A stretch of DNA of 64,000 nt, taken from positions 39,804,001-39,868,000 of the forward strand of contig CM075979.1 in the NCBI GenBank assembly GCA_038087875.1, in the 5' to 3' direction. Position numbers and translations under genes: made by a program. The stretch's first letter is position 1. The number at the start of each line of letters is the position of its first letter. Under the pieces are notes generated by a model that saw only the letters and a program-made list of their open reading frames with translations, did not search any database and was not told where the DNA came from. The DNA is from Malacoraja senta (taxonomy: Eukaryota). This document shows, piece after piece, positions 22,349-64,000 of this stretch.

Positions 22349-22539
22349 AGCTCTTGGTGGGTGTACGTCTGGGCAACCGATCACTGATACTGTTGTTGTT
22401 GGTGCTGATGTCTCTGTGGTTGGTAAGACGGAAGTGGAGGTTTCGCATGGTATGGTGTGCTTCACAATATCACACTTAGATGTACATAACCCAATGTAAC
22501 ACCAGCCAGCTTTATCACTGGTAAAGTAAATTTTCTCTC
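22349..22539 (-). CDS. Mucin exon: single-copy ancestral-type Cys module half (GEKIYFTSDKAGWCYIGLCTSKCDIVKHTIPC...GCPDVHPPRA)
   Basis: 191 nt, phase 1 to 0; resembles MUC5B GEVIYNKTDRAGCHFYAVCNQHCDI segment. Confidence 0.9.
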
Positions 22540-22947
22540 CTGGAAAGAAAAGGAAATGCGATCTCCGTAAGTCTTGACACACTGCACTAATTCAGTATTT
22601 AGGTAAAAAACACACTTGCTAGTACTACATTTTTGGACAAACCATGGAAATGCATACATTGCCTCATGGGAAATGCACTATTTTATGTATTGCATCATGA
22701 GATTTTATTTGGCATATTTCTACCAAGAATCACACACACAGAAAATTAGAAATATCACCTCTTCTTTAGGACAATTGTTCCCCTGGTTGCAGTGGGAAGA
22801 GATAAACGATTGCAGCTTGGTTATATCATGGTTAGATATAACATGCAAAGGAGGGTTAAAAACAAACGTTACCCAAATTTGTGAGGTCAGAACGGAAGGT
22901 TTTTAAATAGTTGCTCTATTTTCCAGGTGAACATTGCAATAGTAACT

Positions 22948-23245
22948 GTGCGCAGAGTAGAGTTGGTAGAGTTGCTGCCTTACAGCGCTTGCACGCCAGA
23001 GACCCTGGTTCGATCCCAACTATGGGTGCTCTCTGTACGAAGTTTGTACATTCTCTCCGCGACTGTGTGGGTTTTCTCCGAGATCTTCGTCTTACTCCCA
23101 CACTCCAAAGACGTACCGGTTTGTAGGTTAATTGACTACTTGGTATAAGTGAAAATTGTCCTTATTGTGTGTAGACAGTGTTAGTGCATGGGGATCGCTG
23201 GTCGGTGTGGACTCGGTGGGCCGAAGGGCCTGTTTCCACGCCTTG
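22948..23245 (+). mobile_element. tRNA-derived V-SINE (HE1-like)
   Basis: Same family. Confidence 0.8.
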
Positions 23246-23399
23246 TAGATTCTGTTGTATTGGGTATAGCAATAGCAGTGGCTTTGCATTTTCCCATGTG
23301 TATAAAGACCTACAGAGCTCGCTGCAGCCTGACCCAAAGGTCGAACAAATGGAAATTGTAATTTAGAAGTAAAATAAATTCTACCTGCTGGTGTTATTG

Positions 23400-24545
23400 G
23401 CATAGATAGACACACAATACTGGAGTAACTCAGTGGGACAAGCAGCATCTCTGGAGAGAAGGAATGGGTGATGTTTCGGGTCGAGACGCTCTTCAGACTG
23501 CGAGTCTGGGGAGAGGAAGACTAGAGAGATATGGAAGGGTATGGTGTGAAAACTACAGATCAAAGCAGACAATGGTCAGGGAAATGTAGAATGGTTCATT
23601 GTTAGCAGAGGGCAAGATGACAGCGAGGCACACAATCAGTAACATTAATCAAGAGGACAGTGAAACTAGTCAGAGCACAGATTGTCTCTGATTTGTAGTT
23701 TAAACACTAATAGAAAGGTTATATGTTTATAATTACAGAATGGTACAGTTGAAACATTTGTGGTTGGATATGTATATTACTGCATTTTGAAACCATTTTG
23801 CCAGCTTATACTGTACTCTAATATTTCATTGGTTTGTATATTCTTCGGATTGAATTTGTTTTAGAATTGCACCAGAAGAATGGTTGAACAGATTTAATAA
23901 ACGTTATTTTGCTTTGTATCTGCAGCCATAATATATTATTCATTTGACAAGTGGGAATGTTTTTTTAAACAATGTTAGCAAGGGTTCCAGTAATAGGGAA
24001 ATGGAATGATGGCAAGATTAATGAACCTTTGATATGTTATTGATGGCTTGATTAGGGAAAATAGTAATGGCAGGTACACCAACTGCAGTCAAGCATTTTT
24101 CCTTGAGGAATATAGAGGGTATAGGAGAAACTGAGAATAAAAGGAGGTGATTAAATATTATTAGTCTGAAGAAGGGTCTCGACCCGAAACATCGCCTATT
24201 TCCTTCGCTCCATAGATGCTGCCTCACCCACTGAGTTTCTCCAGCATTCTTGTCTACCTTTGATTTTCCAGCATCTGCAGTTCCTTCTTAAACAAAATAT
24301 TATTAGCAGGTAAGATATGCTGACTATCATTCTATATATATATTAGAAGCAAGAGATAGACACAAAATGATGGAGGGACAAACAGCTTCTTTGATTAGAA
24401 GGAATGGATGACGTTTCCAGTGGAGACCCTTCTTCAGACTGAGGGGAGAGGGAGACACAGAGATATGGAAGGGTATTGTGTGAAAATGAGATATCAAAGG
24501 GGATGAAGCTCAAGGAAAATGTAGAATAGAACATTGATAGCTAGG
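23400..24545. mobile_element. Cluster of three Penelope 3'-terminal fragments (23400-23680 minus, 24160-24295 plus, 24350-24545 minus)
   Basis: Each carries the ctgaaga...gaaac motif. Confidence 0.65.
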
Positions 24546-24922
24546 GAAAGGTAAATAGGATGGTGAAGAAAGCATATGGTATTGGTAACTTCTGTAGGTC
24601 AAGACATGGAATATAAGAATCGGGATGTTACGGTGCAACTTTACAAAACACTGGTTATACCATAAGGAGTAATGTGTGCAGTTTTGATGCCCACACTATA
24701 GAAAGGATGTGGTTGCACTGGAGAGAGTGCAGAGGTGATTCACCAGGAGACCTGGTGATCTGAATGAGGTATATAAGATGAACAGAAGCAAAGATTGAGC
24801 ATATTGTCCAAATCTTTTTCCCATGGCAGGGATATTAAAAATAAGAGGGCACATGTTTAAGATGAGATGAAGGAGTTTTGGAAGGGACGTGAGGGTTAGG
24901 GATAGCCAGAGGAGGTGCTAGA

Positions 24923-25365
24923 TGTTGTAGCCATTTAGCTTAACTCAGTGTGTTATAACTATAACCAGTTACCTTTAAATTCTATCTGCCTGTAATAATG
25001 TGGGTGGGATTTATATGTAGTCTGAGGCGTGTTTGGGGCTGGGATTCTCGCGCAGACTCTCTAGTAGTTACTTTCATTTGAAGAATGGGGGAGAGGTCAC
25101 AGCTTTTGACCATGCACGAACATGACCACGATTGAATTGAAATGTACTTATACAAGAAGAAGTTTGGATTAATATCTTACTGTTTTTACGACTACAATAA
25201 AGAAACTATTAATCAAGAGACTGTGTTTGGAAGATTTATCTTTCAACGGCATTGAATGTCTCGTGGAGAGCTCGTGAGTGCGTTTCGATTATCTTCTGAT
25301 CCCGTCTTCCATCATAGTGACTAAAGGAAAGAATCCTTGAAACGATATAAAAATCTGTCACCACA
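24923..25365 (+). mobile_element. Probable solo LTR (443 bp) inserted into a CR1 fragment (24550-25535)
   Basis: TG...CA termini, near-TSD ctaga/gtaga, internal AATAAA; CR1 sequence resumes after it. Confidence 0.65.
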
Positions 25366-26710: not shown

Positions 26711-26929
26711 CTGCAGATATTACTTGGCCGTTGACTTTGCAGAAACAGGTTGTTGAAGCTGTGGAACTGGGAGTTGTTGTCTGCACTGTTGTGGTTTCAG
26801 CTGTACTGTGCTCGGTGATTGGAGAGGTGTTTTCGCATTTTCTTGTATATGTCAACGTTTTGCAGCCCTCAGTGCACAGTGTGTAATTGCAGAGGCCCGA
26901 TTTATCTTCAGAACTCACAGAGGATTGCC
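26711..26929 (-). CDS. Divergent terminal copy (R0) of repeat exon (GQSSVSSEDKSGLCNYTLCTEGC...CFCKVNGQVISA)
   Basis: 219 nt, phase 1 to 1, same 6-Cys spacing as the array exons. Confidence 0.88.
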
Positions 26930-28800: not shown

Positions 28801-28846
28801 TTAGAAAATTAAAACAATTTAGGAATGAATTAATTGACAAACTTAC

Positions 28847-29059
28847 CAGGTAGCATTATTCGCCCGTCATTCTCACAGGTACATGTGGTAGTTCCTCTTG
28901 ACTTTGGTGTTACTGTCACTGTTGTAGCTGATGTTGTAGTTTCTGCTGGTCTGGTTGTAGTTTCACATCTTCCTGTGTATTTTAGAACTTTACAATCTTC
29001 AGTACACAGAGTAAAGTTACAGAGGCCTGATTTACCTGTAGACGTCACAGTTGCCTGAC
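28847..29059 (-). CDS. Repeat exon R1 (A type, ends CTCENDGRIMLP)
   Basis: 213 nt, phase 1 to 1, CAG/GTAAG sites intact. Confidence 0.85.
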
Positions 29060-29518: not shown

Positions 29519-29731
29519 CAGGTGACATTATATGTCCGTCAACATCACAGGAACAGATTGTAGTTCCTTTCGACGTTGGTGTTACTGTGACTGTTGTAGC
29601 TGATGTTGTGGTTTCTGCTGGTCTGGTTGTAGTTTCACATCTTCCTGTGTACTTCAGAATTTCACAATCCTCAGTACACAGAGTAAAGTTACAGAGGCCT
29701 GATTTACCTGTAGACGTCACAGTTGCCTGAC
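29519..29731 (-). CDS. Repeat exon R2 (B type, ends CSCDVDGHIMSP)
   Basis: 213 nt, phase 1 to 1, splice sites intact. Confidence 0.85.
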
Positions 29732-29850: not shown

Positions 29851-30063
29851 CAGGTAACATTTTTCGCCCGTCATTCTCACAGGTACATTGTGTAGTTCCT
29901 CTTGATGTTGGTGTGACTGTCACTGTTGTAGCTGTTGTTGTGGTTTCTGCTGGTCTGGTTGTAGTTTCACATCTTCCTGTGTACTTCAGAACTTCACAAT
30001 CCTCAGTACACAGAGTAAAGTTACAGAGGCCTGATTTACCTGCGGAAGTCACAGTTGCCTGAC
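29851..30063 (-). CDS. Repeat exon R3 (A type)
   Basis: 213 nt; only a 119-nt intron to R2. Confidence 0.85.
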
Positions 30064-30840: not shown

Positions 30841-31059
30841 CAGGTGACATTATATGTCCGTCAGCATCACAGGAACAGATGGTAGTTCCTTTTGACTTTG
30901 GTGTGACTGTCACTGTCACTGTTGTAGCTGATGTTGTGGTTTCTGCTGGTCTGGTTGTAGTTTCACATCTTCCAGTGTATTTCAGAACTTCACAATCCTC
31001 AGTACACAGAGTAAAGTTACAGAGGCCTGATTTACCTGCAGAAATCACCGTTGCCTGAC
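30841..31059 (-). CDS. Repeat exon R4 (B type, in-frame +VT)
   Basis: 219 nt, phase 1 to 1. Confidence 0.85.
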
Positions 31060-31878: not shown

Positions 31879-32091
31879 CAGGTAACATTATTCGCCCGTC
31901 ATTCTCACAGGTACATGTGGTAGTTCCTCTTGACGTTGGTGTTACTGTCACTGTTGCAGCTGCTGTTGTAGTTTCTGCTGGTCTGGTTGTACTTTCACAT
32001 CTTCCTGTGTACTTCATAACTTTACAATCTTCAGTACACAGAATAAAGTTACAGAGGCCTGATTTACCTGTAGACGTCACAGTTGCCTGAC
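31879..32091 (-). CDS. Repeat exon R5 (A type)
   Basis: 213 nt, splice sites intact. Confidence 0.85.
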
Positions 32092-32872: not shown

Positions 32873-33085
32873 CTGGTGACATTATATGTCCGTCAACATC
32901 ACATGAACAGATTGTAGTTCCTTTTGACGTTGGTGTTACTGTCACTATTGTAGTTGATGTTGTGGTTTCTGCTGGTCTGGTCGTAGTTTCACATCTTCCT
33001 GTGTACTTCAGAACTTCACAATCCTCAGTACATAGAGTAAAGTTACAGAGGCCTGATTTACCTGCAGAAGTCACAGTTGCCTGAC
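32873..33085 (-). CDS. Repeat exon R6 (B type)
   Basis: 213 nt, splice sites intact. Confidence 0.85.
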
Positions 33086-34826: not shown

Positions 34827-35039
34827 CAGGTAACATTATTCGCCCGTCATTCTCACAGGTACATGTGGTAGTTCCTCTTGACGTTGGTGTTACTGTCACT
34901 GTTGTAGCTACTGTTGTAGTTTCTGCTGGTCTGGTTGTACTTTCACATTTTCCTGTGTACTTCATAACTTTACAATCTTCAGTACACAGAATGAAGTTAC
35001 AGAGGCCTGATTTACCTGTAGACGTCACAGTTGCCTGAC
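34827..35039 (-). CDS. Repeat exon R7 (A type)
   Basis: 213 nt, splice sites intact. Confidence 0.85.
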
Positions 35040-36007: not shown

Positions 36008-36220
36008 CTGGTGACATTATATGTCCGTCAACATCACATGAACAGATTGTAGTTCCTTTTGACGTTGGTGTTACTGTCACTGTTGTAGCTGATGTTGTGG
36101 TTTCTGCTGGTCTGGTTGTAGTTTCACATCTTCCTGTGTACTTCAGAACTTCACAATCCTCAGTACACAGAGTAAAGTTACAGAGGCCTGATTTACCTGC
36201 AGAAGTCACAGTTGCCTGAC
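36008..36220 (-). CDS. Repeat exon R8 (B type)
   Basis: 213 nt, splice sites intact. Confidence 0.85.
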
Positions 36221-37493: not shown

Positions 37494-37706
37494 CAGGTAA
37501 CATTATTCGCCCGTCATTCTCACAGGTACATGTGGTAGTTCCTCTTGACATTGGTGTTACTGTCACTGTTGTAGCTGATGTTGTAGTTTCTGCTGGTCTG
37601 GTTGTACTTTCACATCTTCCTGTGTACTTCATAACTTTACAATCTTCAGTACACAGAATAAAGTTACAGAGGCCTGATTTACCTGTAGACGTCACAGTTG
37701 CCTGAC
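37494..37706 (-). CDS. Repeat exon R9 (A type)
   Basis: 213 nt, splice sites intact. Confidence 0.85.
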
Positions 37707-38453: not shown

Positions 38454-38666
38454 CTGGTGACATTATATGTCCGTCAACATCACATGAACAGATTGTAGTT
38501 CCTTTTGACGTTGGTGTTACTGTCACTGTTGTAGCTGATGTTGTGGTTTCTGCTGGTCTGGTTGTAGTTTCACATCTTCCTGTGTACTTCAGAACTTCAC
38601 AATCCTCAGTACACAGAGTAAAGTTACAGAGGCCTGATTTACCTGCAGAAGTCACAGTTGCCTGAC
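38454..38666 (-). CDS. Repeat exon R10 (B type)
   Basis: 213 nt, splice sites intact. Confidence 0.85.
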
Positions 38667-39932: not shown

Positions 39933-40145
39933 CAGGTAACATTATTCGCCCGTCATTCTCACAGGTACATGTGGTAGTTCCTCTTGATGTTGGTGTTACT
40001 GTCACTGTTGTAGCTGCTGTTGTAGTTTCTGCTGGTCTGGTTGTACTTTCACATCTTCCTGTGTACTTCATTACTTTACAATCTTCAGTACACAGAATAA
40101 AGTTACAGAGGCCTGATTTACCTGTAGACGTCACAGTTGCCTGAC
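39933..40145 (-). CDS. Repeat exon R11 (A type)
   Basis: 213 nt, splice sites intact. Confidence 0.85.
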
Positions 40146-40927: not shown

Positions 40928-41140
40928 CTGGTGACATTATATGTCCGTCAACATCACATGAACAGATTGTAGTTCCTTTTGACGTTGGTGTTACTGTCAC
41001 TGTTGTAGCTGATGTTGTGGTTTCTGCTGGTCTGGTCGTAGTTTCACATCTTCCTGTGTACTTCAGAACTTCACAATCCTCAGTACACAGAGTAAAGTTA
41101 CAGAGGCCTGATTTACCTGCAGAAATCACAGTTGCCTGAC
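40928..41140 (-). CDS. Repeat exon R12 (B type, VISAG variant)
   Basis: 213 nt, splice sites intact. Confidence 0.85.
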
Positions 41141-41702: not shown

Positions 41703-41915
41703 CAGGTAACATTATTCGCCCGTCATTCTTACAGGTACATGTGGTAGTTCCTCTTGACGTTGGTGTTACTGTCACTGTTGTAGCTGCTGTTGTAGTTTCT
41801 GCTGGTCTGGTTGTACTTTCACATCTTCCTGTGTACTTCATAACTTTACAATCTTCAGTACACAGAATAAAGTTACAGAGGCCTGATTTACCTGTAGACG
41901 TCACAGTTGCCTGAC
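41703..41915 (-). CDS. Repeat exon R13 (A type)
   Basis: 213 nt, splice sites intact. Confidence 0.85.
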
Positions 41916-42697: not shown

Positions 42698-42910
42698 CTG
42701 GTGACATTATATGTCCGTCAACATCACATGAACAGATTGTAGTTCCTTTTGACGTTGGTGTTACTGTCACTATTGTAGCTGATGTTGTGGTTTCTGCTGG
42801 TCTGGTCGTAGTTTCACATCTTCCTGTGTACTTCAGAACTTCACAATCCTCAGTACACAGAGTAAAGTTACAGAGGCCTGATTTACCTGCAGAAGTCACA
42901 GTTGCCTGAC
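42698..42910 (-). CDS. Repeat exon R14 (B type)
   Basis: 213 nt, splice sites intact. Confidence 0.85.
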
Positions 42911-44189: not shown

Positions 44190-44402
44190 CAGGTAACATT
44201 ATTCTCCCGTCATTCTCACAGGTACATGTGGTAGTTCGCCTTGACGTTGGTGTTACTGTCACTGTTGTAGCTGCTGTTGTAGTTTCTGCTGGTCTGGTTG
44301 TACTTTCACATCTTCCTGTGTACTTCATAACTTTACAATCTTCAGTACACAGAATAAAGTTACAGAGGCCTGATTTACCTGTAGACGTCACAGTTGCCTG
44401 AC
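44190..44402 (-). CDS. Repeat exon R15 (A type)
   Basis: 213 nt, splice sites intact. Confidence 0.85.
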
Positions 44403-45184: not shown

Positions 45185-45397
45185 CTGGTGACATTATATG
45201 TCCGTCAACATCACATGAACAGATTGTAGTTCCTTTTGACGTTGGTGTTACTGTCACTATTGTAGCTGATGTTGTGGTTTCTGCTGGTCTGGTCGTAGTT
45301 TCACATCTTCCTGTGTACTTCAGAACTTCACAATCCTCAGTACACAGAGTAAAGTTACAGAGGCCTGATTTACCTGCAGAAATCACAGTTGCCTGAC
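45185..45397 (-). CDS. Repeat exon R16 (B type, VISAG variant)
   Basis: 213 nt, splice sites intact. Confidence 0.85.
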
Positions 45398-45948: not shown

Positions 45949-46161
45949 CAGGTAACATTATTCGCCCGTCATTCTCACAGGTACATGTGGTAGTTCCTCT
46001 TGACATTGGTGTTACTGTCACTGTTGTAGCTGATGTTGTAGTTTCTGCTGGTCTGGTTGTACTTTCACATCTTCCTGTGTACTTCATAACTTTACAATCT
46101 TCAGTACACAGAATAAAGTTACAGAGGCCTGATTTACCTGTAGACGTCACAGTTGCCTGAC
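45949..46161 (-). CDS. Repeat exon R17 (A type)
   Basis: 213 nt, splice sites intact. Confidence 0.85.
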
Positions 46162-46909: not shown

Positions 46910-47122
46910 CTGGTGACATTATATGTCCGTCAACATCACATGAACAGATTGTAGTTCCTTTTGACGTTGGTGTTACTGTGACTGTTGTAGCTGATGTTGT
47001 GGTTTCTGCTGGTCTGGTTGTAGTTTCACATCTTCCTGTGTACTTCAGAACTTCACAATCCTCAGTACACAGAGTAAAGTTACAGAGGCCTGATTTACCT
47101 GCAGAAGTCACAGTTGCCTGAC
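46910..47122 (-). CDS. Repeat exon R18 (B type)
   Basis: 213 nt, splice sites intact. Confidence 0.85.
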
Positions 47123-48388: not shown

Positions 48389-48601
48389 CAGGTAACATTA
48401 TTCGCCCGTCATTCTCACAGGTACATGTGGTAGTTCCTCTTGATGTTGGTGTTACTGTCACTGTTGTAGCTGCTGTTGTAGTTTCTGCTGGTCTGGTTGT
48501 ACTTTCACATCTTCCTGTGTACTTCATAACTTTACAATCTTCAGTACACAGAATAAAGTTACAGAGTCCTGATTTACCTGTAGACGTCACAGTTGCCTGA
48601 C
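48389..48601 (-). CDS. Repeat exon R19 (A type)
   Basis: 213 nt, splice sites intact. Confidence 0.85.
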
Positions 48602-49371: not shown

Positions 49372-49584
49372 CTGGTGACATTATATTTCCGTCAACATCA
49401 CATGAACAGATTGTAGTTCCTTTTGACGTTGGTGTTACTGTCACTGTTGTAGCTGATGTTGTGGTTTCTGCTGGTCTGGTCGTAGTTTCACATCTTCCTG
49501 TGTACTTCAGAACTTCACAATCCTCAGTACACAGAGTAAAGTTACAGAGGCCTGATTTACCTGCAGAAATCACAGTTGCCTGAC
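49372..49584 (-). CDS. Repeat exon R20 (B type, VISAG variant)
   Basis: 213 nt, splice sites intact. Confidence 0.85.
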
Positions 49585-50142: not shown

Positions 50143-50355
50143 CAGGTAACATTATTCGCCCGTCATTCTCACAGGTACATGTGGTAGTTCCTCTTGACGT
50201 TGGTGTTACTGTCACTGTTGTAGCTGCTGTTGTAGTTTCTGCTGGTCTGGTTGTACTTTCACATCTTCCTGTGTACTTCATAACTTTACAATCTTCAGTA
50301 CACAGAATAAAGTTACAGAGGCCTGATTTATCTGTAGACGTCACAGTTGCCTGAC
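50143..50355 (-). CDS. Repeat exon R21 (A type)
   Basis: 213 nt, splice sites intact. Confidence 0.85.
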
Positions 50356-51136: not shown

Positions 51137-51349
51137 CTGGTGACATTATATGTCCGTCAACATCACATGAACAGATTGTAGTTCCTTTTGACGTTGGTGT
51201 TACTGTCACTATTGTTGTTGATGTTGTGGTTTCTGCTGGTCTGGTCGTAGTTTCACATCTTCCTGTGTACTTCAGAACTTCACAATCCTCAGTACACAGA
51301 GTAAAGTTACAGAGGCCTGATTTACCTGCAGAAGTCACAGTTGCCTGAC
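51137..51349 (-). CDS. Repeat exon R22 (B type)
   Basis: 213 nt, splice sites intact. Confidence 0.85.
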
Positions 51350-53045: not shown

Positions 53046-56000
53046 TTTTTTTTTTAAATTTTTTTATTTTTTAGAAGTACGGTAGATTACAGTAATGTAC
53101 AACACGTATATATTAATACATTTTTTGTACCGCTTCACTTTTTTAAACTTTAAGAAAGAAAAAGAAAGAAGTAAGAAAAGTGAAGAAAGTGCGCAAAGGT
53201 TGTGAAGTGCAAAAGAGTGTTGGGAAAAGAAAGCCCCTTAGAAAAGAAGTTAGAGAAGGAAGTAAAGTTAGAAAATAGACCCTAGAAAAAAAAAGAGAAA
53301 GAAAGAAGGAACAATCGCTCTATTATAACTCTTATACCATACTTCATAGAGAAGGAACTACCAACCAAGTCTGTTTTTATTTTACCTCCCATTACCAGGT
53401 CCAGATACCTTTTATTTATTTATTTGTTTTTCTAAATTACTATTGCACCTCATGCTTGTAATAGGTCCAAAAACGTAGACCACGTCTTTTGAAATTGGTC
53501 TACTTTGCCTACTAGGAGGAATCTCATCTCTTCCAGATGTAATGTTTCCAACATATTTGATGTCCACATTTTTATTGTTGGTGTGGGCGCATTTTTCCAG
53601 AATTTAAGTATAAGCTTTTTTCCCATTATTAGCCCATAATTGAGTAAATTCTTCTGATACACGTTTAATTCAGGAATACCTTCCGATATTCCAAAAATAA
53701 TCCATTCTGGTTTTGGTACCAGTTTTATTTTGATTAATTTTGAAAAAATATCAAATATTTCAAACCAGAATTTTTGGATTTTTGTACAAAAAACAAAAGA
53801 ATGTGCTATGGTAGCTTCTTGACATATACATTTATCACAGATTGGTGAGACGTTAGGAAAGATTTTATTTAGTTTGGTTTTTGAATAATATAATCTATGT
53901 AATGTTTTAAATTGGATAAGCGTATGTCGTACGTTGATCGAGCATTTATGCACCTGTAATAAATGATTATCCCAACTCTCTTTTGAAATTTTTATACCTA
54001 GATCTTGTTCCCAATCTCTTCTAATTCCATCTGTTGTGGGTATTTCTATATTTAAGATGATATTATATAAGTATGATATTAAATTAACTGATTCCGCCTT
54101 TGTCTTCATTGCTTCATCTAGTAAGTCGGAAGGCATATTATAATAATCTTTTGTGTGTGTTTTCAAATAGTCACAGATTTGTAGATATTTAAAATATTGA
54201 TTATTTTTCAAATTATATTTCAGTTGTAGTTGTTGGAATGATAGTAATTTTTCTAATTCATACAGATCTTCGAGCGTTTTGATTCCCATTCTTTCCCATT
54301 GTATAAATGCTTTATCTATGATTGAAGGTTTAAACGATGGGTTATTGACTATTGGTATTAAGAGAGATAGGTTTCTTAATTTTAGATTCTGTTTTATTTG
54401 CTTCCATGTTCTAATAGTGCTATATATAATTGGATTTTTATTATAATTTTTATTATTCAAATTTATTGGAGAGAGAATAATCGCTCCTATATTATTCGGG
54501 GAGCAATCCCCTTTTTCCATTATAATCCAGTCCACCTGCTGGGCAGAATTGTCCAGCAGGTGAATCATATTTTTAATATTTACTGCCCAGTTATAATACA
54601 TAAAGTTAGGGAGCGCTAGACCCCCCAACTCTTTTCGTTTGTTAAGGTGTGTTCTTTGTATTCTGTGGGATTTGTAATCCCATATAAAATTTGTAATGTC
54701 TGAGTCCAGTTTTTTGAAAAACTTTTTTGGGAGATATATAGGTATTGATTGAAATAGGTAAAGGATTTGTGGTAAGAAAATCATTTTTATAGCATTTATC
54801 CTACCTATTAAGGACATCGGAAGTGTTTTCCAAAATTTAATCAGATTATTTAATTTCTTAAGTAGGGGATTATAATTAGCTTTAAACATATCATGGTAAT
54901 TTCTAGTAATCTCAATTCCTAAATATTTGAATTTTTCCATAGCTATTTTAAAAGGGAATTTCCTGAGATGTGTTGAGTCTTTTGGTTTAATCGACATAAT
55001 TTCACTTTTGTTCCAATTTATTCTATATCCTGAAAAGGATCCAAAGTCCTCAATTAAGTTTAATATATTTGGTATACTAATTTGTGGTTTTGTGATGTAC
55101 AGTAGTACATCATCAGCATATAGGGATAGTTTGTTGTTTGAATATTTTGTGTTATAACCGTGAATATTCGAGTGTGTTCTTATTTTTTCAGCAAGGGGTT
55201 CAATTACCAAAGCAAATAACAGCGGTGATAGTGAACATCCTTGTCTGTTGCCCCTAGATAATTCGAATTTTGAAGATAATATATTATTAGTTAGTATTCT
55301 AGCCGTAGGTTTGTTATATAGTAGTTTTATCCATGCAATAAAGTTTTCTCCCAATTGGAATTTTTGCAATACTTTGATCATATAGTCCCATTCTACTTGA
55401 TCAAACGCTTTTTCTGCGTCCAGTGAGATGATAGCTAACTCTTGGTCATAAGATTTATGTGAATGCATTATGTTAAGCAAACGTCTCAAATTATTAAATG
55501 AGTGTCTCTTAGGTATAAATCCTGTTTGATCCTCATGTATTAGTCTACTAACATACTTGCTTAATCTATTGGCTAATGTTTTTGCTATTATTTTCTGATC
55601 CGTATTTAACAAAGCAATAGCTCTATATGATCCTGGTTCTTCTATATTTTTATCTTTTTTAAGTATTAATATGATCGTTGATTCCGCTAGTGTTTCAGGT
55701 AGGTTTTGCTCTTTATAAGCATATGTATACATTTTTTGTAATCGTGGAGTAACTATATCATAAAAAGATTTATAAAATTCATTACTGAATCCGTCTGGTC
55801 CTGGTGTTTTTCCATTTTTTAGTGTTTTTATTGTGTCTTCTATCTCCTTAGAAGTAATTTGTGCTCCCAGTTCCTCTTGTTCCCTGCGTTCTAATTGTGG
55901 TAGATTACAATTATCTAAAAATTCTGAGATTTTATTATTGTCTATTGACGTTTTAGATGTGTATAGATTCTGGTAAAATTGAGCAAATCTTTTATTAATA

Positions 56001-56764
56001 TCCTTGGGTAGTGTTAATACTTCCCCTCTATCTGATTTAATCTTTAATATTGCATTCTCTTTTTCCCGTTTTTTAAGTTGTCGTGCTAGAAGTTTGTGGG
56101 GTTTGTCCCCGAATTCGAAGTGTTCTTGTTTTGTGATTTGAAATAATGTTATAACTTTCTCTGACAGTAATTTATTTAACTGAAATTTCAGTAGTAGTAT
56201 TTTATTATGTTTATCCATAGTTGGGTCTTTAGCATTATCTATATCTAACTGTTTTATTTGATCTTCTAAGTGTCTTTGTTCATTCTTATTCTTTTTATTT
56301 TGATAAGCTTGAAATGAAATAATGACTCCTCTTATAAATGCTTTGAAGGATTCCCATAATAACGTGGGGGATATCTCTGGTGTATCATTTAACTCAAAAA
56401 ATAGATCCATCTGTTTTTTTAGATAGATACTCCCTTGAGGGTCTTTTAAAATTTGTGAGTTAAACCTCCAGAACGGTTTATTCATAGACATTCCTTCTAG
56501 TTTTAGAACAAAAGTTAACGGAGAATGATCTGAGATCGCATTAATATGATATTTAGGATTCAGAGATTGCGAAATTAATTTTGTATCCACAAGAAAATAG
56601 TCTATCCGTGAATATGTTTTATGCACCATTGAATAAAACGAGTAATCCCTTCCCGTCGGGTTTGCAATCCTCCATACATCTGTTATATTTGTGTTTTCCA
56701 TATATGTGTGTAAGAGTTCACTGGTTTTAGATTTCGTCTGACCTTTTTGTTTTTGCATCGATTT
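53046..56764 (-). mobile_element. 5'-truncated L1-clade LINE (~3.7 kb) with 3' UTR and poly(A) tail
   Basis: Interrupts intron sequence tcttttc|aatgtg that is continuous in sister units; poly-T on + strand at 53046; carries ORF2. Confidence 0.93.
53450..56764 (-). CDS. L1 ORF2 (N-terminally truncated): C-terminal part of APE endonuclease, reverse transcriptase, CCHC knuckle
   Basis: SRIDY and SDH (EN), PGPDGF, LDAEKAFD, RQGCSLSP, YADD, CDKC..8..H...C; ~1100 codons with no stop. Confidence 0.92.
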   Translation of the reverse strand, partial: KSMQKQKGQTKSKTSELLHTYMENTNITDVWRIANPTGRDYSFYSMVHKTYSRIDYFLVDTKLISQSLNPKYHINAISDHSPLTFVLKLEGMSMNKPFWRFNSQILKDPQGSIYLKKQMDLFFELNDTPEISPTLLWESFKAFIRGVIISFQAYQNKKNKNEQRHLEDQIKQLDIDNAKDPTMDKHNKILLLKFQLNKLLSEKVITLFQITKQEHFEFGDKPHKLLARQLKKREKENAILKIKSDRGEVLTLPKDINKRFAQFYQNLYTSKTSIDNNKISEFLDNCNLPQLERREQEELGAQITSKEIEDTIKTLKNGKTPGPDGFSNEFYKSFYDIVTPRLQKMYTYAYKEQNLPETLAESTIILILKKDKNIEEPGSYRAIALLNTDQKIIAKTLANRLSKYVSRLIHEDQTGFIPKRHSFNNLRRLLNIMHSHKSYDQELAIISLDAEKAFDQVEWDYMIKVLQKFQLGENFIAWIKLLYNKPTARILTNNILSSKFELSRGNRQGCSLSPLLFALVIEPLAEKIRTHSNIHGYNTKYSNNKLSLYADDVLLYITKPQISIPNILNLIEDFGSFSGYRINWNKSEIMSIKPKDSTHLRKFPFKIAMEKFKYLGIEITRNYHDMFKANYNPLLKKLNNLIKFWKTLPMSLIGRINAIKMIFLPQILYLFQSIPIYLPKKFFKKLDSDITNFIWDYKSHRIQRTHLNKRKELGGLALPNFMYYNWAVNIKNMIHLLDNSAQQVDWIIMEKGDCSPNNIGAIILSPINLNNKNYNKNPIIYSTIRTWKQIKQNLKLRNLSLLIPIVNNPSFKPSIIDKAFIQWERMGIKTLEDLYELEKLLSFQQLQLKYNLKNNQYFKYLQICDYLKTHTKDYYNMPSDLLDEAMKTKAESVNLISYLYNIILNIEIPTTDGIRRDWEQDLGIKISKESWDNHLLQVHKCSINVRHTLIQFKTLHRLYYSKTKLNKIFPNVSPICDKCICQEATIAHSFVFCTKIQKFWFEIFDIFSKLIKIKLVPKPEWIIFGISEGIPELNVYQKNLLNYGLIMGKKLILKFWKNAPTPTIKMWTSNMLETLHLEEMRFLLVGKVDQFQKTWSTFLDLLQA

Positions 56765-56804
56765 AATGTGAATGGAAGAGATCTGTGATAATTGACACAC
56801 TTAC

Positions 56805-57017
56805 CAGGTAACATTATTCGCCCGTCATTCTCACAGGTACATGTGGTAGTTCCTCTTGACGTTGGTGTTACTGTCACTGTTGTAGCTGCTGTTGTAGTTT
56901 CTGCTGGTCTGGTTGTACTTTCACATTTTCCTGTGTACTTCATAACTTTACAATCTTCAGTACACAGAATGAAGTTACAGAGGCCTGATTTACCTGTAGA
57001 CGTCACAGTTGCCTGAC
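56805..57017 (-). CDS. Repeat exon R23 (A type)
   Basis: 213 nt; L1 inserted 40 nt downstream of its donor. Confidence 0.83.
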
Positions 57018-57681: not shown

Positions 57682-57894
57682 CTGGTGACATTATATGTCC
57701 GTCAACATCACATGAACAGATTGTAGTTCCTTTTGACGTTGGTGTTACTGTGACTGTTGTAGCTGATGTTGTGGTTTCTGCTGGTCTGGTTGTAGTTTCA
57801 CATCTTCCTGTGTACTTCAGAACTTCACAATCCTCAGTACACAGAGTAAAGTTACAGAGGCCTGATTTACCTGCAGAAGTCACAGTTGCCTGAC
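57682..57894 (-). CDS. Repeat exon R24 (B type)
   Basis: 213 nt, splice sites intact. Confidence 0.85.
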
Positions 57895-59167: not shown

Positions 59168-59380
59168 CAGGTAACATTATTCGCCCGTCATTTTCACAGG
59201 TACATGTGGTAGTTCCTCTTGACGTTGGTGTTACTGTCACTGTTGTAGCTGCTGTTGTAGTTTCTGCTGGTCTGGTTGTACTTTCACATCTTCCTGTGTA
59301 CTTCATAACTTTACAATCTTCAGTACACAGAATAAAGTTACAGAGGCCTGATTTACCTGTAGACGTCACAGTTGCCTGAC
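59168..59380 (-). CDS. Repeat exon R25 (A type)
   Basis: 213 nt, splice sites intact. Confidence 0.85.
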
Positions 59381-60127: not shown

Positions 60128-60340
60128 CTGGTGACATTATATGTCCGTCAACATCACATGAACAGATTGTAGTTCCTTTTGACGTTGGTGTTACTGTCAC
60201 TGTTGTAGCTGATGTTGTGGTTTCTGCTGGTCTGGTTGTAGTTTCACATCTTCCTGTGTACTTCAGAACTTCACAATCCTCAGTACACAGAGTAAAGTTA
60301 CAGAGGCCTGATTTATCTGCAGAAGTCACAGTTGCCTGAC
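60128..60340 (-). CDS. Repeat exon R26 (B type; first array exon in gene order)
   Basis: 213 nt, splice sites intact. Confidence 0.85.
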
Positions 60341-61105
60341 CTGGAGGCAAAGTAATGAAAATCAGTTTGTGTGCACCTGAATGTAATAAAATCATGAATT
60401 ATCTTTATCTCTGCTAATGAAGCTGGTTCATGTATTGCACTTGGTAGCTTTTGGACATCGGTGTTTTCAGCCAACTGCTGGACTCATCATTTCCAGACAT
60501 TATCCAGATATAGTGATGGCTCCTTAAGGACTCGCGTGTACCTTAACATCAGTTCTCCAAATTCTCTTTCCAGACTCTTTAAGTTTCACAATATTTCAAG
60601 ATTCTTCTGAGATTTGGAACAACACCAACAGCCACCATGTAGACATACACACACTAGGAGCACGAACTGCCTCTCAAATCCAATCCACCAGTCGTCGTGT
60701 TGTACAGCATTGAAACTCATCCAAGCTAATCAAATTACCTAATTGAATGTCCCATTTACCTGTGTTTGGCCTATAATCATTTGAACCTTTCCCATGCACC
60801 CACCTGCCCAAATATCTGTTGAGCCATACTTCGATTCCCACTATTATGATCTAATTACCTAATATAACAGTAAATTTATTATATTATTAAACATTATTGT
60901 TTATTGTACATTTGTTTGTTGTATTGTTGTGTTTAATGTGGCTATAAAGTCTTAGCAAGTAATAATTTCAGTGTCTAGTCCTCGTGAATATTACAATTAA
61001 ACAATCTTGACTTGATTTCTATGTTGTAATTATACCCTCCTGTACCACTTCCTTTGGCAGCATGCTCCACATCCTCACCAGCCTTTAATGCATTTTTAAT
61101 ACCTC

Positions 61106-61408
61106 TTTAGTTTAGTTTAGTTTAGAGATACAGCGCGGAAACAGGCCCTTTGGCCCACCGGGTCTGCGCTGACCAGCAATCCCCGCACATTAATACCCAC
61201 TAGGGCCAATTTTTACATTTACCAAGCCAATTAACCTACAAAACTGTCCGTCTTTGGAGGGTGGGAGGAAACCGAAGATCTCAGAGAAAACCCACGCAGG
61301 TGACGGGGTGAACGTACAAACTCCGTACAAATAGCACCCATAGTCGGGATCGACCCCAGGTCTCTGGCGCTGCACTCGCTGTAAGGCAGCAACTCTACCA
61401 CTGCGCCA
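61106..61408 (-). mobile_element. tRNA-derived V-SINE (HE1-like)
   Basis: Same family, (tttag)n tail. Confidence 0.8.
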
Positions 61409-62063
61409 ATAAGGTCATGTCTGTTATTTCTGTGATTTTAAATCACTCTCCCATCTACCCATTGTAATTTTTCAACACTCACATCTTGTCCTGAATCTAT
61501 CTCCCTCTGTTTTAATAGATATAAAATCTCTACTTCCACTGTTTTAAGAAAGAGAGAGTTCCAAAGAATCTTGTTTCTTTGAGAGAACAAAATCATCTCC
61601 AATCAGAAATGAGTGACTTATTTTAAACCGGATCCCTTGTCATTTTTAAATGTAGAGAAATCAGTGAATCAGGGAAGGTCAATGTGTTCATGGAAAGCAG
61701 CTGATGGACAATATGTGTCCACTGTTCCAGAATGGGTATTCTGACACCATAGACTTTATGAACACTGTTTTTCTGCCGTTAGTGATTAACACTGTGCCCT
61801 GTTTCCGTGAACAAACATAGAAGTGGGCAAAGGAAAGGGAAGCTGCAGTTTTCACAGGGCATAATTGGAGACAGATGATTTATGATAATTTGTGCAAACT
61901 ACAATGTGTACTGAAGAATACTACAAAACATAATCAACAGCAAGAGAGAGAAAATAGTGGATGGTCACACTAATTGGGAAGGACCCAGAAATAATGATCA
62001 AGATTCGACAATTCAAAAAGTTAATAGAATACAATTAAGTAATGAATTAATTAGCAAAATTAC

Positions 62064-64000
62064 CTGGTGATAATATCTTCCCTTGTACTGTGCATGAGCA
62101 TGTTGTTGTTGCTGGGGTGGTCGTTGATGTGGGTTGGGTTCGTTCAGATGAAGTTTCAGTGGAAGTTGTGGTTGTGGCTCTCAATGTAGTGACTGGAGTT
62201 GTTGAGGTGGTCAGCAGTGCTTCTGTCTTTGGCATGGTGGAGGCAGTTGTTGTTGGGTTGGATGTTGTTGTGGTGACTGTGGTTGGGGTAGTTGTCGTTG
62301 ATGTTGGTTGGGTTGTTTGCGATGTGGTGGAGGTTGTAGTGATGCTATGTGTAGTGGCTGGAGTAGTGGTGGTGGTGGTTGGTGTAGGTGTAGGTGTAGT
62401 GGTAGTAGATGTTGGTTGGGTTCCTTTTGTCGTCGTTTCAGTGGAGGTTGTAGTGATGCTATGTGTAGTGACTGGAGCTGTTGTGGTGGTGACTGTGGTT
62501 GGTAAGGTGGTGGTTGATGTTGGCTGGGTTCTCTCGGGTGTAGTTTCAGTGGAGGTTGTAGTTGTGGTTCTCAGTGTAGTGACTGGAGTAGTGGTGGTGG
62601 TGGTTGGTGTAGTGGTGGTAGATGTTGGCTGGGTTCCTTTTGTGGTAGTTTCAGTGGAGGTTGTAGTTGTGGTTCTCAGTGTAGTGACTGGAGTAGTGGT
62701 GGTGGTGGTTGGTGTAGTGGTGGTAGATGTTGGCTGGGTTCCTTTTGTGGTAGTTTCAGTGGAGGTTGTAGTTGTGGTGCTATGTGTAGTGACTGGAGCT
62801 GTTGTAATGGTGACTGTTGTCGGTGAGGTGGTGGTTGATGTTGGCTGGGTTCTCTCGGGTGTAGTTTCAGTAGATGTTGTAGTTGTGGTACTATGTGTAG
62901 TGACTGGAGTTGTGGTGGTAGCTGTTGTGGGAGAAGTTGTCGTTGATGTTGGTTGGGTTCTCTCGGGTGTAGTTTTAATGGAGGTTGTAGTTGTGGTTCT
63001 CAGTGTAGTGACTGGAGTTGTTGAGGTGGTCAACAATGCTTCTGTCTTTGGAGCGGTGGAGGCAGTTGGGCTAGATGTTGTAGTGGTGACTGTTGTCGGT
63101 GAGGTGGTCGTTGATGTTGCCTGGGTTCTTTCGGGTGTAGTTTCAGTGGAGGTTGCAGTTGTGGTTCTCAGTGTAGTGACTGGAGTAGTGGTGGTGGTGG
63201 TTGGTGTAGGTGTAGGTGTAGTGGTGGTGGATGTTGGTTGGGTTATTTTTGTCATAGTTTCAGTGGAGGTTGTAGTGATGCTATGTGTAGTGACTGGAGC
63301 TGTTGTGGTGGTGACTGTGGTTGGTAAGGTGGTGGTTGATGTTGGCTGGGTTCTCTCGGGTGTAGTTTCAGTGGAGGTTGTAGTTGTGGTACTATGTGTA
63401 GTGACTGGAGTAGTGGTGGTGGTGGTAGGTGTAGTGGTAGTGGATGTTGGTTGTGTTCTTTTTGTCGTCGTTTCAGTGGAGACTGTAGGTGTGGTGCTAT
63501 GTGTAGTGACTGGAGTAGTGGTGGTTGGTGTAGGTGTAGTGGTAGTGGATGTTGGTTGGGTTCTTTTTGTGGTAGTTTCAGTGGACGTTGTAGTTGTGGT
63601 GCTATGTGTAGTGACTGGAGCTGTTGTAATGGTGACTGTCGTTGGTAAGGTGGTGGTTGATGTTGGTTGGGTTCTTTTTGTGGTCGTTTCAGTGGACGTT
63701 GTAGTTGTAGTTCTCAGTGTGGTGACTGGAGCAGTTGTTGTAGCGGTCTTCTGTGCTGTTGTCATTGGAGGGATAGAGACTGTTCCAGTTGGAATAGAAT
63801 TTGTGGTGGTGGCCGTTGTTATTGCAGAAGTTATCCTCCATGGGGCTCCAGTTTGTGTGGTTGGGGTTGTTTCAAAGCTAAGTGTTGTGCTGGGAACCGT
63901 GGAGGTCTTGGGAGTGCACGGATACACCTGTCGGATTATTGTCCCATTCACACCGCACGTTGCTTTGATGCATCCTCCAATGCCGTCTGTTGTATGGTAG
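62064..64000 (-). CDS. Large PTS exon (partial, runs off window): post-D3 Cys module end (YHTTDGIGGCIKATCGVNGTIIRQVYPC), ~600-aa Thr-rich region with 14 imperfect TQ[P/A]TSTTT-containing repeats, ends CSCTVQGKILSP
   Basis: Open frame, phase-1 donor CAG/GTAAT at 62063. Confidence 0.93.

What the first reader, a model, noticed from the sequence alone, without database searches (positions are those of the whole stretch)
22349..62105. Mucin with a beads-on-a-string core: ~28 tandem copies of a 6-Cys module that is single-copy in human MUC5AC/MUC5B
Seen: 26 near-identical exons plus one divergent copy (about 1920 aa in total). Each encodes GQATV..GKSGLCNFxLCTEDCxVxKYTGRC, a ~27-aa Thr-rich linker, and CxCxxDGxIMxP. 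All have intact splice sites, no stops, all six Cys conserved, and only one in-frame indel. Established (recalled): human MUC5B has one such module (CFCRAFGQFFSPGEVIY...CHFYAVCNQHCDI...C) between the PTS region and D4; the 22349-22539 exon matches it. Inference: this lineage built most of the mucin core by serial exon duplication of a small disulfide domain, giving alternating folded beads and short O-glycan spacers instead of one long PTS exon. I do not know this architecture from the literature but cannot exclude a prior report; multi-exon repeat cores do occur in some non-mammalian mucins.
Basis: partly seen in the sequence, partly recalled or inferred. Interest (0 to 1): 0.9.

Follow-up and report, generated by a model that had tools for sequence, protein, structure and literature searches.

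The report
Skate mucin core of 28 mini-domains
A skate gel-forming mucin gene builds most of its central region from 27 duplicated small exons that give 28 tiny disulfide-locked domains joined by short sugar-bearing linkers, a design shared by sharks and rays, present in database gene models, and not found in the papers searched.

Summary
On the minus strand, one exon (64000-62064) encodes a 605-aa Cys-free PTS stretch. It is followed by 26 near-identical exons (213 nt, one of 219), one divergent copy and a terminal module exon. All repeat exons are phase 1-1, with a pyrimidine tract plus CAG acceptor and a G|GTAAGT donor. The conceptual spliced product is 2005 aa with no stop and 28 complete six-Cys modules separated by 27-aa Thr-rich linkers.

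Exons are far better conserved than their introns (88% vs 50-66% between the two subtypes). Against a second skate genome, dN/dS is about 0.3 in the folded part.

A profile of the exon finds only elasmobranch proteins among 1.84 billion representatives. These are RefSeq "mucin-2-like" models from sharks and rays with 3 to about 65 copies and the same ...SPG|QA.V junction. None of the models scanned has a CysD domain.

The module has no Pfam family. It is homologous to the small module that follows E3 in human MUC5AC (E 6.6e-5). AlphaFold2 gives a five-strand Fn1/E/VWC-like fold.

This is a real, lineage-wide variant of mucin architecture. It sits in public gene models but was not described in any paper I found. 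Transcripts, exact copy number and function remain untested.

The parts
62064..64000 (-). PTS exon. It runs off the window at 64000. It starts inside the post-D3 (N-flank) module (...YHTTDGIGGCIKATCGVNGTIIRQVYPC), then a 605-aa Cys-free PTS core (T 55%, S 9%, P 10%) with 105-nt internal repeats. It ends with the first half-module CSCTVQGKILSP and donor G|GTAATT.
60128..60340 (-). Repeat exon E1 (subtype A), 213 nt, phase 1-1
59168..59380 (-). Repeat exon E2 (subtype B)
57682..57894 (-). Repeat exon E3 (A)
56805..57017 (-). Repeat exon E4 (B)
53450..56800 (-). Intact 1116-aa LINE ORF (reverse transcriptase) inserted in the intron after E4. It is not part of the mucin. It makes this intron 5455 nt, against 1741 nt for the matching intron after E20.
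51137..51349 (-). Repeat exon E5 (A)
50143..50355 (-). Repeat exon E6 (B)
49372..49584 (-). Repeat exon E7 (A)
48389..48601 (-). Repeat exon E8 (B)
46910..47122 (-). Repeat exon E9 (A)
45949..46161 (-). Repeat exon E10 (B)
45185..45397 (-). Repeat exon E11 (A)
44190..44402 (-). Repeat exon E12 (B)
42698..42910 (-). Repeat exon E13 (A)
41703..41915 (-). Repeat exon E14 (B)
40928..41140 (-). Repeat exon E15 (A)
39933..40145 (-). Repeat exon E16 (B)
38454..38666 (-). Repeat exon E17 (A)
37494..37706 (-). Repeat exon E18 (B)
36008..36220 (-). Repeat exon E19 (A)
34827..35039 (-). Repeat exon E20 (B)
32873..33085 (-). Repeat exon E21 (A)
31879..32091 (-). Repeat exon E22 (B)
30841..31059 (-). Repeat exon E23 (A), 219 nt; the only in-frame indel (extra VT in the linker)
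29851..30063 (-). Repeat exon E24 (B-like), followed by the shortest intron (119 nt)
29519..29731 (-). Repeat exon E25 (A-like)
28847..29059 (-). Repeat exon E26 (B-like), donor G|GTAAGTTT
26711..26929 (-). Divergent repeat exon, 51% aa identity to E1. Acceptor gcag|GG, donor GCA G|GTGAGT, phase 1-1.
22349..22539 (-). Terminal exon. It carries the C-terminal two thirds of the last (canonical pre-D4) module GEKIYFTSDKAGWCYIGLCTSKCDIVKHTIPC, a short PTS stretch and the start of the next domain. Acceptor ccag|GA, donor GCT|GTGAGT.
508..20521 (-). Downstream exons of the same gene: VWCN-like (20521-20327), VWD4 (17409-17068; Pfam VWD E 6.4e-15), the rest of D4, C8/TIL, VWC and the cystine-knot exon (753-508). 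They align to the Pristis and Scyliorhinus proteins.

Best explanation
What it is. The window holds the whole central and C-terminal part of a skate gel-forming mucin gene, on the minus strand. RefSeq calls the related elasmobranch proteins 'mucin-2-like'; the N-terminal region of the Pristis protein looks more MUC5-like. The order is: D3 assembly, a small capping module, one 605-aa PTS exon, an array of 27 duplicated cassette exons, then VWCN-D4-VWC-CK.

How the array is built. Each 213-nt exon encodes three pieces: the last three strands of one module (QATV...C), a 27-aa Thr-rich linker, and the first hairpin of the next module (CxCxxDGxIMxP). The intron sits in phase 1 inside the Gly codon of the P-G-Q turn, at the same place in every unit. 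It is also the place where the PTS exon ends and the terminal exon begins. Unequal crossing-over between introns can therefore add or remove units while keeping the frame and restoring whole modules. This accounts for the nested 2.4, 4.2 and 8.5 kb higher-order repeats, the A/B alternation, and the very different copy numbers between species.

What the module is. It is a paralogue of the small caps that border the PTS domain of MUC5-type mucins. It is predicted to fold as a five-strand Fn1/E/VWC-subdomain-like unit of about 45 aa.

Inferred, not shown. The six conserved Cys presumably form three disulfides; pairing could not be read from the model. The protein would be a chain of stiff, protease-resistant, mostly unglycosylated beads spaced by short O-glycan bristles. 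A/divergent-type N-halves keep an N-x-T sequon, giving 16 of 28 modules one. In these CysD-less mucins the beads would take the role that CysD domains play in tetrapod MUC2/MUC5: breaking up the glycan brush and offering protein surfaces for weak non-covalent contacts that set gel properties.
For: Anatomy:
- 26 + 1 + 1 exons, canonical sites, symmetric phase, 0 stops in 2005 aa, 28 modules.

Constraint:
- Exon 88% vs intron 50-66% identity between subtypes.
- A vs B dN/dS is 0.55; within subtypes there are 27 synonymous and 28 non-synonymous distinct variants.
- Against Rhinoraja longicauda exons, dN/dS is 0.32 in the folded part and 0.57 in the linker, with introns at 78-90% nt identity.

Not an assembly stutter:
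- Higher-order copies are 93-98% identical, not 100%.
- One copy carries a private LINE insertion.

Other species:
- The exon profile hits 9 of 1.84e9 representatives. Seven are named elasmobranch mucin models, one is an unnamed ENA contig ORF holding a shark-like exon, and one is spurious.
- Module matches of at least 15 bits per model, half-modules at model ends included: 21 Heptranchias, 65 Narcine, 27 Chiloscyllium punctatum, 10 Pristis (9 repeats plus the post-D3 cap). All use the ...SPG|QA.V junction.
- A Leucoraja erinacea model splices A-B-A and is 87-96% identical per module to window exons.

History:
- Repeated modules and terminal modules form separate clades (100/99 each) containing both sharks and rays, so the repeat founder predates their split.
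- Within the repeat clade, modules group by lineage.

Identity of the module:
- No Pfam family.
- Profile hit to human MUC5AC residues 396-444 of chain 8qsp, just after E3 (E 6.6e-5).
- The same cap occurs in the elasmobranch proteins and at window 64000-63905.
- AF2 pLDDT 81, five strands.
- Best structural matches are chicken Mucin-5B 1275-1325 (TM 0.74, E 9.9e-3), Fn1 fingers, VWF E' and E3, and VWC.

No CysD:
- No CysD Pfam hit in the parts scanned of five orthologues, and no Cys in the window's PTS core.
Against: - No transcript or peptide evidence was available. RefSeq models are predictions, and several are visibly wrong: the Rhinoraja and Leucoraja models read into introns.
- Because every exon is phase 1-1, any subset could be skipped, so the mature protein may hold fewer than 28 modules.
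- The copy number of a 93-98% identical array in one assembly is not verified by spanning reads.
- Rhinoraja shows only 4 intact and 2 decayed copies in the stretch I could see. Some copies clearly die, or that assembly is collapsed.
- dN/dS of 0.3-0.55 is only moderate constraint. The exon-intron contrast could owe something to gene conversion.
- Fold matches are weak in absolute terms: Z at most 5.7, and PDB Foldseek E above 0.2.
- Disulfide pairing could not be read from the model.
- The two-module model draws the linker as a moderately confident beta hairpin (pLDDT about 70), so 'string' may be too simple.
- The proposed function is inference from architecture alone.
Confidence: 0.8

Rival explanations
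1. The exons are real, but they are cassette exons used in varying numbers. Alternative splicing or skipping would give a family of isoforms, and the 28-module protein would be rare or absent.
For: - All 27 exons are phase 1-1, so any combination stays in frame.
- Splice sites are near-identical along the array, giving the spliceosome little to choose between.
- Gene models in other species contain gaps within their arrays.
Against: - Donors (GTAAGT) and acceptors are consensus-strength in every copy.
- Every copy keeps its frame and all six Cys, which is not expected for exons that are rarely included.
- No transcript data either way.
Confidence: 0.3
2. The array exists, but its length here is an assembly artefact: an over-expansion or mis-join of a shorter tandem array.
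For: - Units share 93-98% identity over kilobases, a range in which assemblers can err.
- The related skate Rhinoraja shows only about 6 units in the part of its locus that I could read.
Against: - Copies are not identical.
- Nested higher-order structure (2.4, 4.2, 8.5 kb) is regular, and there are distinct private variants.
- A 3.3-kb LINE sits in one unit only, and there is no N.
- Independent assemblies of Narcine, Heptranchias and Chiloscyllium carry 20-65 module matches.
Confidence: 0.12
3. The array consists of dead pseudo-exons left over from recent segmental duplication. They would look intact only because they are young.
For: - Many copies are 97-99% identical, so few mutations have had time to accumulate.
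- Decayed copies do exist in Rhinoraja.
Against: - The A/B subtypes diverged long enough for their introns to fall to 50-66% identity with many indels, while exons stay at 88% with a single in-frame indel.
- dN/dS is below 1 within and between species.
- The same module array is kept across sharks and rays.
Confidence: 0.04

Closest known systems
Small Cys modules bordering the PTS domain of MUC5-type mucins (the one after E3 of the D3 assembly, and the one before VWCN/D4)
   Same: - Homologous by sequence profile: human MUC5AC chain 8qsp residues 396-444, E 6.6e-5.
- Top structural match is chicken Mucin-5B 1275-1325.
- Same CxC...G....PG...C....C...C.......C layout.
- The window's own gene has both caps. 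Its terminal module clusters with those of other sharks.
   Different: - In tetrapod mucins these occur once at each border and have no name or Pfam model. Here one of them has been amplified to 28 copies, and up to about 65 in an electric ray.
- In the alignment, one profile Cys position (the C of ...knC...) aligns to a non-Cys residue in the human post-E3 copy.
CysD (Mucin2_WxxW) domains interrupting the PTS of MUC2, MUC5AC and MUC5B
   Same: - Same idea: folded, disulfide-rich, poorly O-glycosylated domains spaced along the mucin domain.
- Present in several copies.
   Different: - Unrelated domain. No Pfam Mucin2_WxxW hit in the parts scanned of five orthologues.
- From my own knowledge, CysD is larger (about 110 aa, 10 Cys), far fewer in number, and separated by hundreds of PTS residues rather than 27.
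Xenopus integumentary mucins FIM-A.1 and FIM-C.1 (TFF modules) and FIM-B.1 (short consensus repeats)
   Same: - Non-mammalian mucins in which shuffled cysteine-rich modules sit among Thr-rich O-glycosylated stretches.
[quoted passage not shown]
   Different: - The modules there are TFF or sushi domains imported from other families. Here the module is the mucin's own border cap.
- The regularity seen here (one module per 71 aa, 28 times) is not something I know from the FIMs (my own knowledge).
Fibronectin type I (finger) modules and VWF/mucin E modules
   Same: - Best structural matches: tPA finger Z 5.7, Fn1 pairs, VWF E' Z 4.9, VWF E3 Z 4.8, MUC2 E3.
- About 45 aa, with a hairpin plus a three-strand sheet.
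- Fn1 modules also occur in tandem.
   Different: - No detectable sequence relationship to Fn1, and all scores are modest.
- Fn1 has two disulfides, whereas this module has six Cys (my own knowledge).
- Fn1 arrays are joined directly, not through glycosylated linkers.

Membership tests
Gel-forming mucin (MUC2/MUC5 type) | N-terminal D1-D2-D'D3 assemblies (VWD-C8-TIL units) | tested here: met
   These lie outside the window but are present in the related elasmobranch proteins. Pfam finds VWD, C8 and TIL in P0003, P0012, P0004 and P0005. Residues 1-1300 of the Pristis protein align end to end with MUC5AC, MUC5B and MUC2 chains. The window begins in the module right after D3.
Gel-forming mucin (MUC2/MUC5 type) | Central PTS domain rich in Thr/Ser/Pro and free of Cys | tested here: met
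   605-aa core with T 55%, S 9%, P 10% and 0 Cys.
Gel-forming mucin (MUC2/MUC5 type) | C-terminal D4 assembly, VWC domains and cystine knot | tested here: met
   Pfam VWD hit at 17409-17068, E 6.4e-15. Exons from 20521 to 508 align with the C-termini of the Pristis and Scyliorhinus proteins. The matching part of the Pristis protein hits MUC2-C structures, E 3e-125. The cystine knot was identified only by alignment and by eye.
Gel-forming mucin (MUC2/MUC5 type) | CysD (Mucin2_WxxW) domains within the PTS region | tested here: not met
   No hit in the parts scanned of five orthologues, and no Cys in the window's PTS core. This feature is not universal: Lang et al. 2016 report CysD in only 11 of 26 frog mucins (PMC4948705).
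MUC5 rather than MUC2 orthology | Closer to MUC5AC/5B than to MUC2 in a phylogeny, or in conserved synteny | tested here: inconclusive
   Best-hit scores only: N-terminal region 1540.8 bits to MUC5AC, 1388 to MUC5B and 1278.4 to MUC2. Among PDB mucin chains the module profile hits MUC5AC only. RefSeq names are 'mucin-2-like'. No tree or synteny was done.
PTS-border cap module of MUC5-type mucins | Significant sequence similarity to the module following E3 or preceding VWCN | tested here: met
   Profile A2 against PDB: MUC5AC 8qsp residues 396-444, E 6.6e-5, covering profile positions 4-52 of 53. The terminal (pre-D4) modules of three sharks and of the window align with the repeats at 36-38% identity.
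Fn1 / E-module / VWC-subdomain fold | Small all-beta fold: an N-terminal hairpin plus a three-strand antiparallel sheet pinned by disulfides | tested here: inconclusive
   The AF2 model has pLDDT 81 and five strands in that order. Top matches are of this class, but Z is at most 5.7, PDB Foldseek E is above 0.2, and the best AFDB hit is at E 9.9e-3. Disulfide pairing could not be inspected.
Any Pfam family for the module | Score above the gathering threshold | tested here: not met
   No family at E up to 1, apart from sub-threshold noise from Crisp and FIBL-2.

The most novel reading that the evidence does not exclude
Elasmobranchs replaced the CysD-in-PTS design with a purpose-built polymer of Fn1-like beads that make reversible homotypic or beta-zipper contacts, with each other or with microbial or partner proteins. 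On this reading, unit number (about 6 to 65 between species) is an evolvable dial for mucus gel strength. The two orphan caps of human MUC5AC/5B would then be interaction sites that have been overlooked.
Probability: 0.2. Interest if true: 0.75.

Novelty: new variant of a known kind. Interest (0 to 1): 0.55.

Why it matters
Mucin biology treats the central region as PTS brush plus CysD. Here a whole vertebrate class uses a third solution.

- **Origin of the repeat.** The mucin's own small border module has been amplified by exon duplication into tens of copies, with only 27 residues of glycan spacer between them.
- **A handle on an unnamed domain.** That domain has no name, no Pfam model and no assigned role.
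- **A clean example of an evolutionary mechanism.** Introns placed in phase 1 inside a domain let unequal crossing-over change domain number without breaking folds.
- **A practical warning.** Current elasmobranch gene models of this locus are fragmentary or read into introns, so mucus proteomics that relies on them will miss or misassign peptides.

It is not a new kind of system, and the sequences are already public as unannotated predictions.

Tried and rejected
- **GA donor.** I first read the donor as GA (non-canonical) with a seventh Cys. This came from printing sequence after the Gly codon. One search shows canonical G|GTAAGT, so I withdrew it (notes 1-2).
- **Protein searches for transcript-derived fragments.** They returned only three short models and no Logan or RNA-derived proteins, so I obtained no expression evidence.
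- **P0009 cluster.** These ENA proteins match profile positions 14-33 only (WYTLCTSHCTTLY repeats). I judged them an unrelated repeat ORF.
- **Locus look-ups.** The look-up of encoding contigs for the Leucoraja model found nothing. The Rhinoraja locus was fetched instead. It ends before that gene's D4, so its full copy number is unknown.
- **Earlier notes of this scan.** Nothing was found near this place or by words.
- **Literature.** Seven searches and five papers searched by term did not turn up this array.
- **CysD and Pfam.** CysD identity was rejected. Pfam assignment of the module was rejected.
- **Species.** The window's species was not identified beyond 'a skate'. It is 78-90% identical in DNA to Rhinoraja longicauda, and its exons are 87-96% identical per module to a Leucoraja erinacea protein model.

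Full report
**1. What is in the sequence**

The gene lies on the minus strand. Tandem Repeats Finder and the composition profile show a G/T-rich plus-strand block at 62.4-63.7 kb with 105-nt and 321-nt periods. On the minus strand this is a long Thr-rich ORF.

Direct-repeat analysis finds 26 copies of a unit of about 300 nt between 28.7 and 60.4 kb.
- subtype A: ...CSCDVDGHIMSP
- subtype B: ...CTCENDGRIMLP

A relaxed tblastn finds only two further relatives, at 26929-26711 (51% identical) and 22539-22349 (N-terminal half only). The window contains no N.

**2. Splice sites and frame**

I first misread the donor as GA. That was my error, caused by printing sequence after the Gly codon. One search shows that every one of the 26 exons:
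- is 213 nt (E23 is 219);
- begins after a pyrimidine tract plus CAG;
- ends CC(A/T) G|GTAAGT;
- is phase 1 at both ends.

The PTS exon ends ...TCA CCA G|GTAATT. The divergent exon is gcag|GG...GCA G|GTGAGT. The terminal exon is ccag|GA...GCT|GTGAGT.

Joined at these natural sites, the last 20 codons of the PTS exon plus all 28 exons translate to 2005 aa without a stop. The product holds 28 complete modules of the form CxCxxDGxIMxPGQATVTSxGKSGLCNFxLCTEDCxVxKYTGRC. Linkers are 27 aa (25 of them) or 29 aa (2), with 47% Thr and 8% Ser.

**3. The rest of the gene**

The PTS exon runs off the window at 64000. Its first codons read ...YHTTDGIGGCIKATCGVNGTIIRQVYPC. This is the tail of a small Cys module that also follows the D3 assembly in the elasmobranch proteins.

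The PTS core between that Cys and the first CSC is 605 aa, Cys-free, with 55% Thr.

Downstream of the array lie a VWCN-like exon (20521-20327), VWD4 (Pfam VWD E 6.4e-15), the rest of D4, C8/TIL, VWC exons and a cystine-knot exon at 753-508. The window therefore contains the entire central region of the mucin. About 600 aa are classical PTS and about 1920 aa are module array.

**4. Is the array functional DNA or young junk?**

- Between subtypes A and B the exons are 88% identical. The 200 nt upstream and downstream are 66% and 50% identical and full of gaps. Within subtypes the figures are 97% for exons against 71-84% for introns.
- The only exon indel is in frame.
- Nei-Gojobori dN/dS between the A and B consensus sequences is 0.55. 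Distinct within-subtype variants are 27 synonymous to 28 non-synonymous, against roughly 1:3 expected if neutral.
- I fetched the matching locus of the skate Rhinoraja longicauda (L001, GCA_053455715.1). Its DNA is 78-90% identical to the window.
- Against its four intact exons, the folded part has dN 0.087 and dS 0.269 (ratio 0.32). The linker has 0.115 and 0.203 (ratio 0.57).
- That locus also holds a truncated copy and a deleted copy, so units are born and die.

**5. Is it an assembly artefact?**

Self-comparison shows nested higher-order repeats of about 4.2 and 8.5 kb at 93-98% identity, not 100%. One unit alone carries an intact 1116-aa LINE ORF with a reverse-transcriptase domain. Independent assemblies of other species show long arrays (section 6). 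The existence of the array is secure. The exact count of 26 is not verified by spanning reads.

**6. Relatives**

A profile of seven exon translations (A1) was run with HMMER against 1.84 billion representative proteins. It gave nine hits: seven named elasmobranch proteins, one unnamed ENA contig ORF (P0008) and one spurious repeat ORF (P0009). P0008 reads through a shark-like exon into its intron.

| Species | Record | Module matches of at least 15 bits |
|---|---|---|
| Heptranchias perlo | XP_067833067 | 21 in 1590 aa |
| Narcine bancroftii | XP_069776560 | 17 |
| Narcine bancroftii | XP_069776668 (6083 aa) | 65 |
| Pristis pectinata | XP_051885680 | 10 (9 repeats plus the post-D3 cap) |
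| Chiloscyllium plagiosum | XP_043562375 | 4 |
| Chiloscyllium punctatum | XP_072448971 | 27 |
| Rhinoraja longicauda | XP_078271729 | 4 |
| Scyliorhinus torazame | GCB69236 | 2 |

These counts include half-modules at the ends of partial models. XP_069776668 and XP_072448971 came in as members of the hit clusters. All models use the same junction ...SPG|QA(T/I/V)V. A Leucoraja erinacea model (LOC129705929) splices A-B-A, and its modules are 87-96% identical to window exons. So the window is from a skate close to, but not shown to be, Leucoraja.

Several models are plainly imperfect: the Rhinoraja and Leucoraja ones read into introns.

A maximum-likelihood tree of 56 modules (44 columns, so many forks are unresolved) separates two groups, each at 100/99 support:
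- the terminal pre-D4 modules of the window, Scyliorhinus and Chiloscyllium;
- all repeated modules.

Within the repeats, batoids form a clade (98/100) and modules group by species. The repeat founder therefore predates the shark-ray split. Arrays have since been homogenised or re-expanded in each lineage.

No chimaera, bony-fish or tetrapod protein reached E 0.001. A single 45-aa copy would not be expected to reach it in a library of that size.

**7. What the module is**

- Pfam has no model for it.
- A profile of 22 junction-spanning modules (A2) matches human MUC5AC D3-assembly constructs at residues 396-444 of chain 8qsp (E 6.6e-5). The matched sequence is ACVCTYNGQRFHPGDVIYHTTDGTGGCISARCGANGTIERRVYPC, immediately after the E3 module and before the PTS.
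- In PDB, that profile hit no mucin other than MUC5AC at E up to 10.
- The elasmobranch proteins carry the same cap at about 1203-1252.
- AlphaFold2 on A2 gives mean pLDDT 81 and five strands: a hairpin plus a three-strand sheet.
- Foldseek against PDB lists Fn1 modules, VWF TIL'E', and VWF, MUC2 and MUC5B D assemblies, all at E above 0.2.
- VIA-align gives tPA finger Z 5.7, VWF E' Z 4.9 and VWF E3 (1193-1241) Z 4.8.
- Against Swiss-Prot models the top hit is chicken Mucin-5B 1275-1325 (TM 0.74, rmsd 2.2 Å, E 9.9e-3), followed by chordin-like VWC domains.

Together these place the module in the Fn1/E/VWC-subdomain class and identify it as a paralogue of the PTS-border caps of MUC5-type mucins. 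The structural scores are modest, as is usual for a 45-aa domain. I could not inspect disulfide pairing.

A two-module model (A3) folds both beads the same way. It draws the linker as a hairpin at pLDDT about 70. AlphaFold ignores O-glycans, so this says little about the native linker.

**8. CysD and gene identity**

No Mucin2_WxxW domain is found in the Pristis, Chiloscyllium (two species) or Rhinoraja proteins, or in residues 1-1750 and 5900-6083 of the long Narcine protein. The N-terminal 1300 residues of the Pristis protein score 1540.8 bits against MUC5AC, 1388 against MUC5B and 1278.4 against MUC2. The C-terminus can only be compared with MUC2-C structures. RefSeq calls these proteins mucin-2-like. 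I leave MUC2 versus MUC5 open, leaning MUC5.

**9. Mechanism**

Shown:
- The phase-1 intron sits inside the P-G-Q turn of every module.
- The same position ends the PTS exon and begins the terminal exon.
- Units are nested in higher-order repeats.
- Copy number differs widely between species.

Inferred:
- Unequal crossing-over between introns adds or deletes units without breaking frame or fold.
- The six conserved Cys form three disulfides.
- The mature protein is a chain of about 28 stiff beads separated by short O-glycan bristles. N-x-T sequons occur in 16 of 28 modules, because B-type N-halves read NFI and lack the sequon.
- In these CysD-less mucins the beads supply the naked protein surfaces that CysD supplies elsewhere.

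The functional step is the weakest part of the argument.

**10. Literature**

None of these papers mentions such an array, on term searches within each:
- Lang et al. 2016, the reference survey of mucin evolution. [quoted passage not shown]
- The shark skin mucus proteome, which reports mucin-5B and mucin-2-like proteins (PMC10707392).
- The MUC2-C structure paper, which renames D4N as VWCN (PMC10082768).
- The MUC5AC D3 paper, which notes that E3 is too flexible to model (PMC11933400).

The nearest conceptual precedent is the family of frog integumentary mucins, which carry shuffled TFF or sushi modules (PMC7177656). Further searches found nothing. The library lacks most subscription journals, so a prior report cannot be excluded.

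**11. Verdict**

- A PTS exon remains.
- Homologous caps exist at both PTS borders, so the module is not strictly single-copy elsewhere.
- The design is elasmobranch-wide.
- It is already present, unannotated, in public gene models.

It is a new variant of a known kind of protein. It is of solid interest to mucin and domain-evolution specialists, but it is not a new kind of system.

Noticed in passing
window 53450-56800 (-): An intact 1116-aa LINE ORF2 (Pfam RVT_1, E 3e-41) sits in an AT-rich block (GC 0.30-0.34) inside the intron after exon E4, in the same orientation as the mucin gene. The matching intron after E20 lacks it, so the insertion is younger than the 8.5-kb duplication.
   Followed up: partly
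window 21825-22019, 22911-23126 (+); 5842-6081, 7844-8038, 61190-61375 (-): Short ORFs share a motif (...DPGS.P.MGA..TEFV.SP.D.VGFL.VL.F.PT....TG/CRLIG). They look like copies of one SINE-like interspersed repeat scattered through the introns.
   Followed up: no
L001:93612-93824 (minus strand of the Rhinoraja longicauda locus): About 7 kb beyond the last repeat exon seen in that locus lies a module-like exon on the opposite strand (47% identical; GQAH..SSGKSDLYNFTLCTEDCKVLQYTGRC...). It may belong to a neighbouring mucin-like gene in tail-to-tail orientation.
   Followed up: no
L001:81438-81527 and 85298-85470: Rhinoraja has a truncated repeat exon (the frame is lost after ...CKVL) and a copy with a 5-codon deletion next to an inverted fragment. 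These are decayed units within an otherwise intact array.
   Followed up: partly
window repeat exons E1-E26: Subtype A N-halves read CNFTLC (an N-x-T sequon) and subtype B N-halves read CNFILC (no sequon). Potential N-glycans therefore alternate along the chain, and 16 of 28 modules carry one. Nearly all modules of the other species aligned in A2 keep a sequon (NFT or NIT).
   Followed up: partly
window 62393-63738: The PTS exon is itself built from 105-nt (35-aa) repeats with a 321-nt higher-order period at 78-87% identity.
   Followed up: no
RefSeq models XP_078271729 (Rhinoraja) and LOC129705929 (Leucoraja): Both gene models read through donor sites into introns (for example ...SPGNQIIRVAVELWLK... 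and ...SPGKCVSNQSALLF...). The Pristis model joins the last repeat directly to VWD4, skipping the terminal module and VWCN. Annotation of this locus is unreliable across skates and rays.
   Followed up: partly
window 3098-3315: A 30/62/91-nt tandem repeat (GTGTGCAAGGGTCACACTCACC...) lies in an intron near the 3' end of the gene.
   Followed up: no
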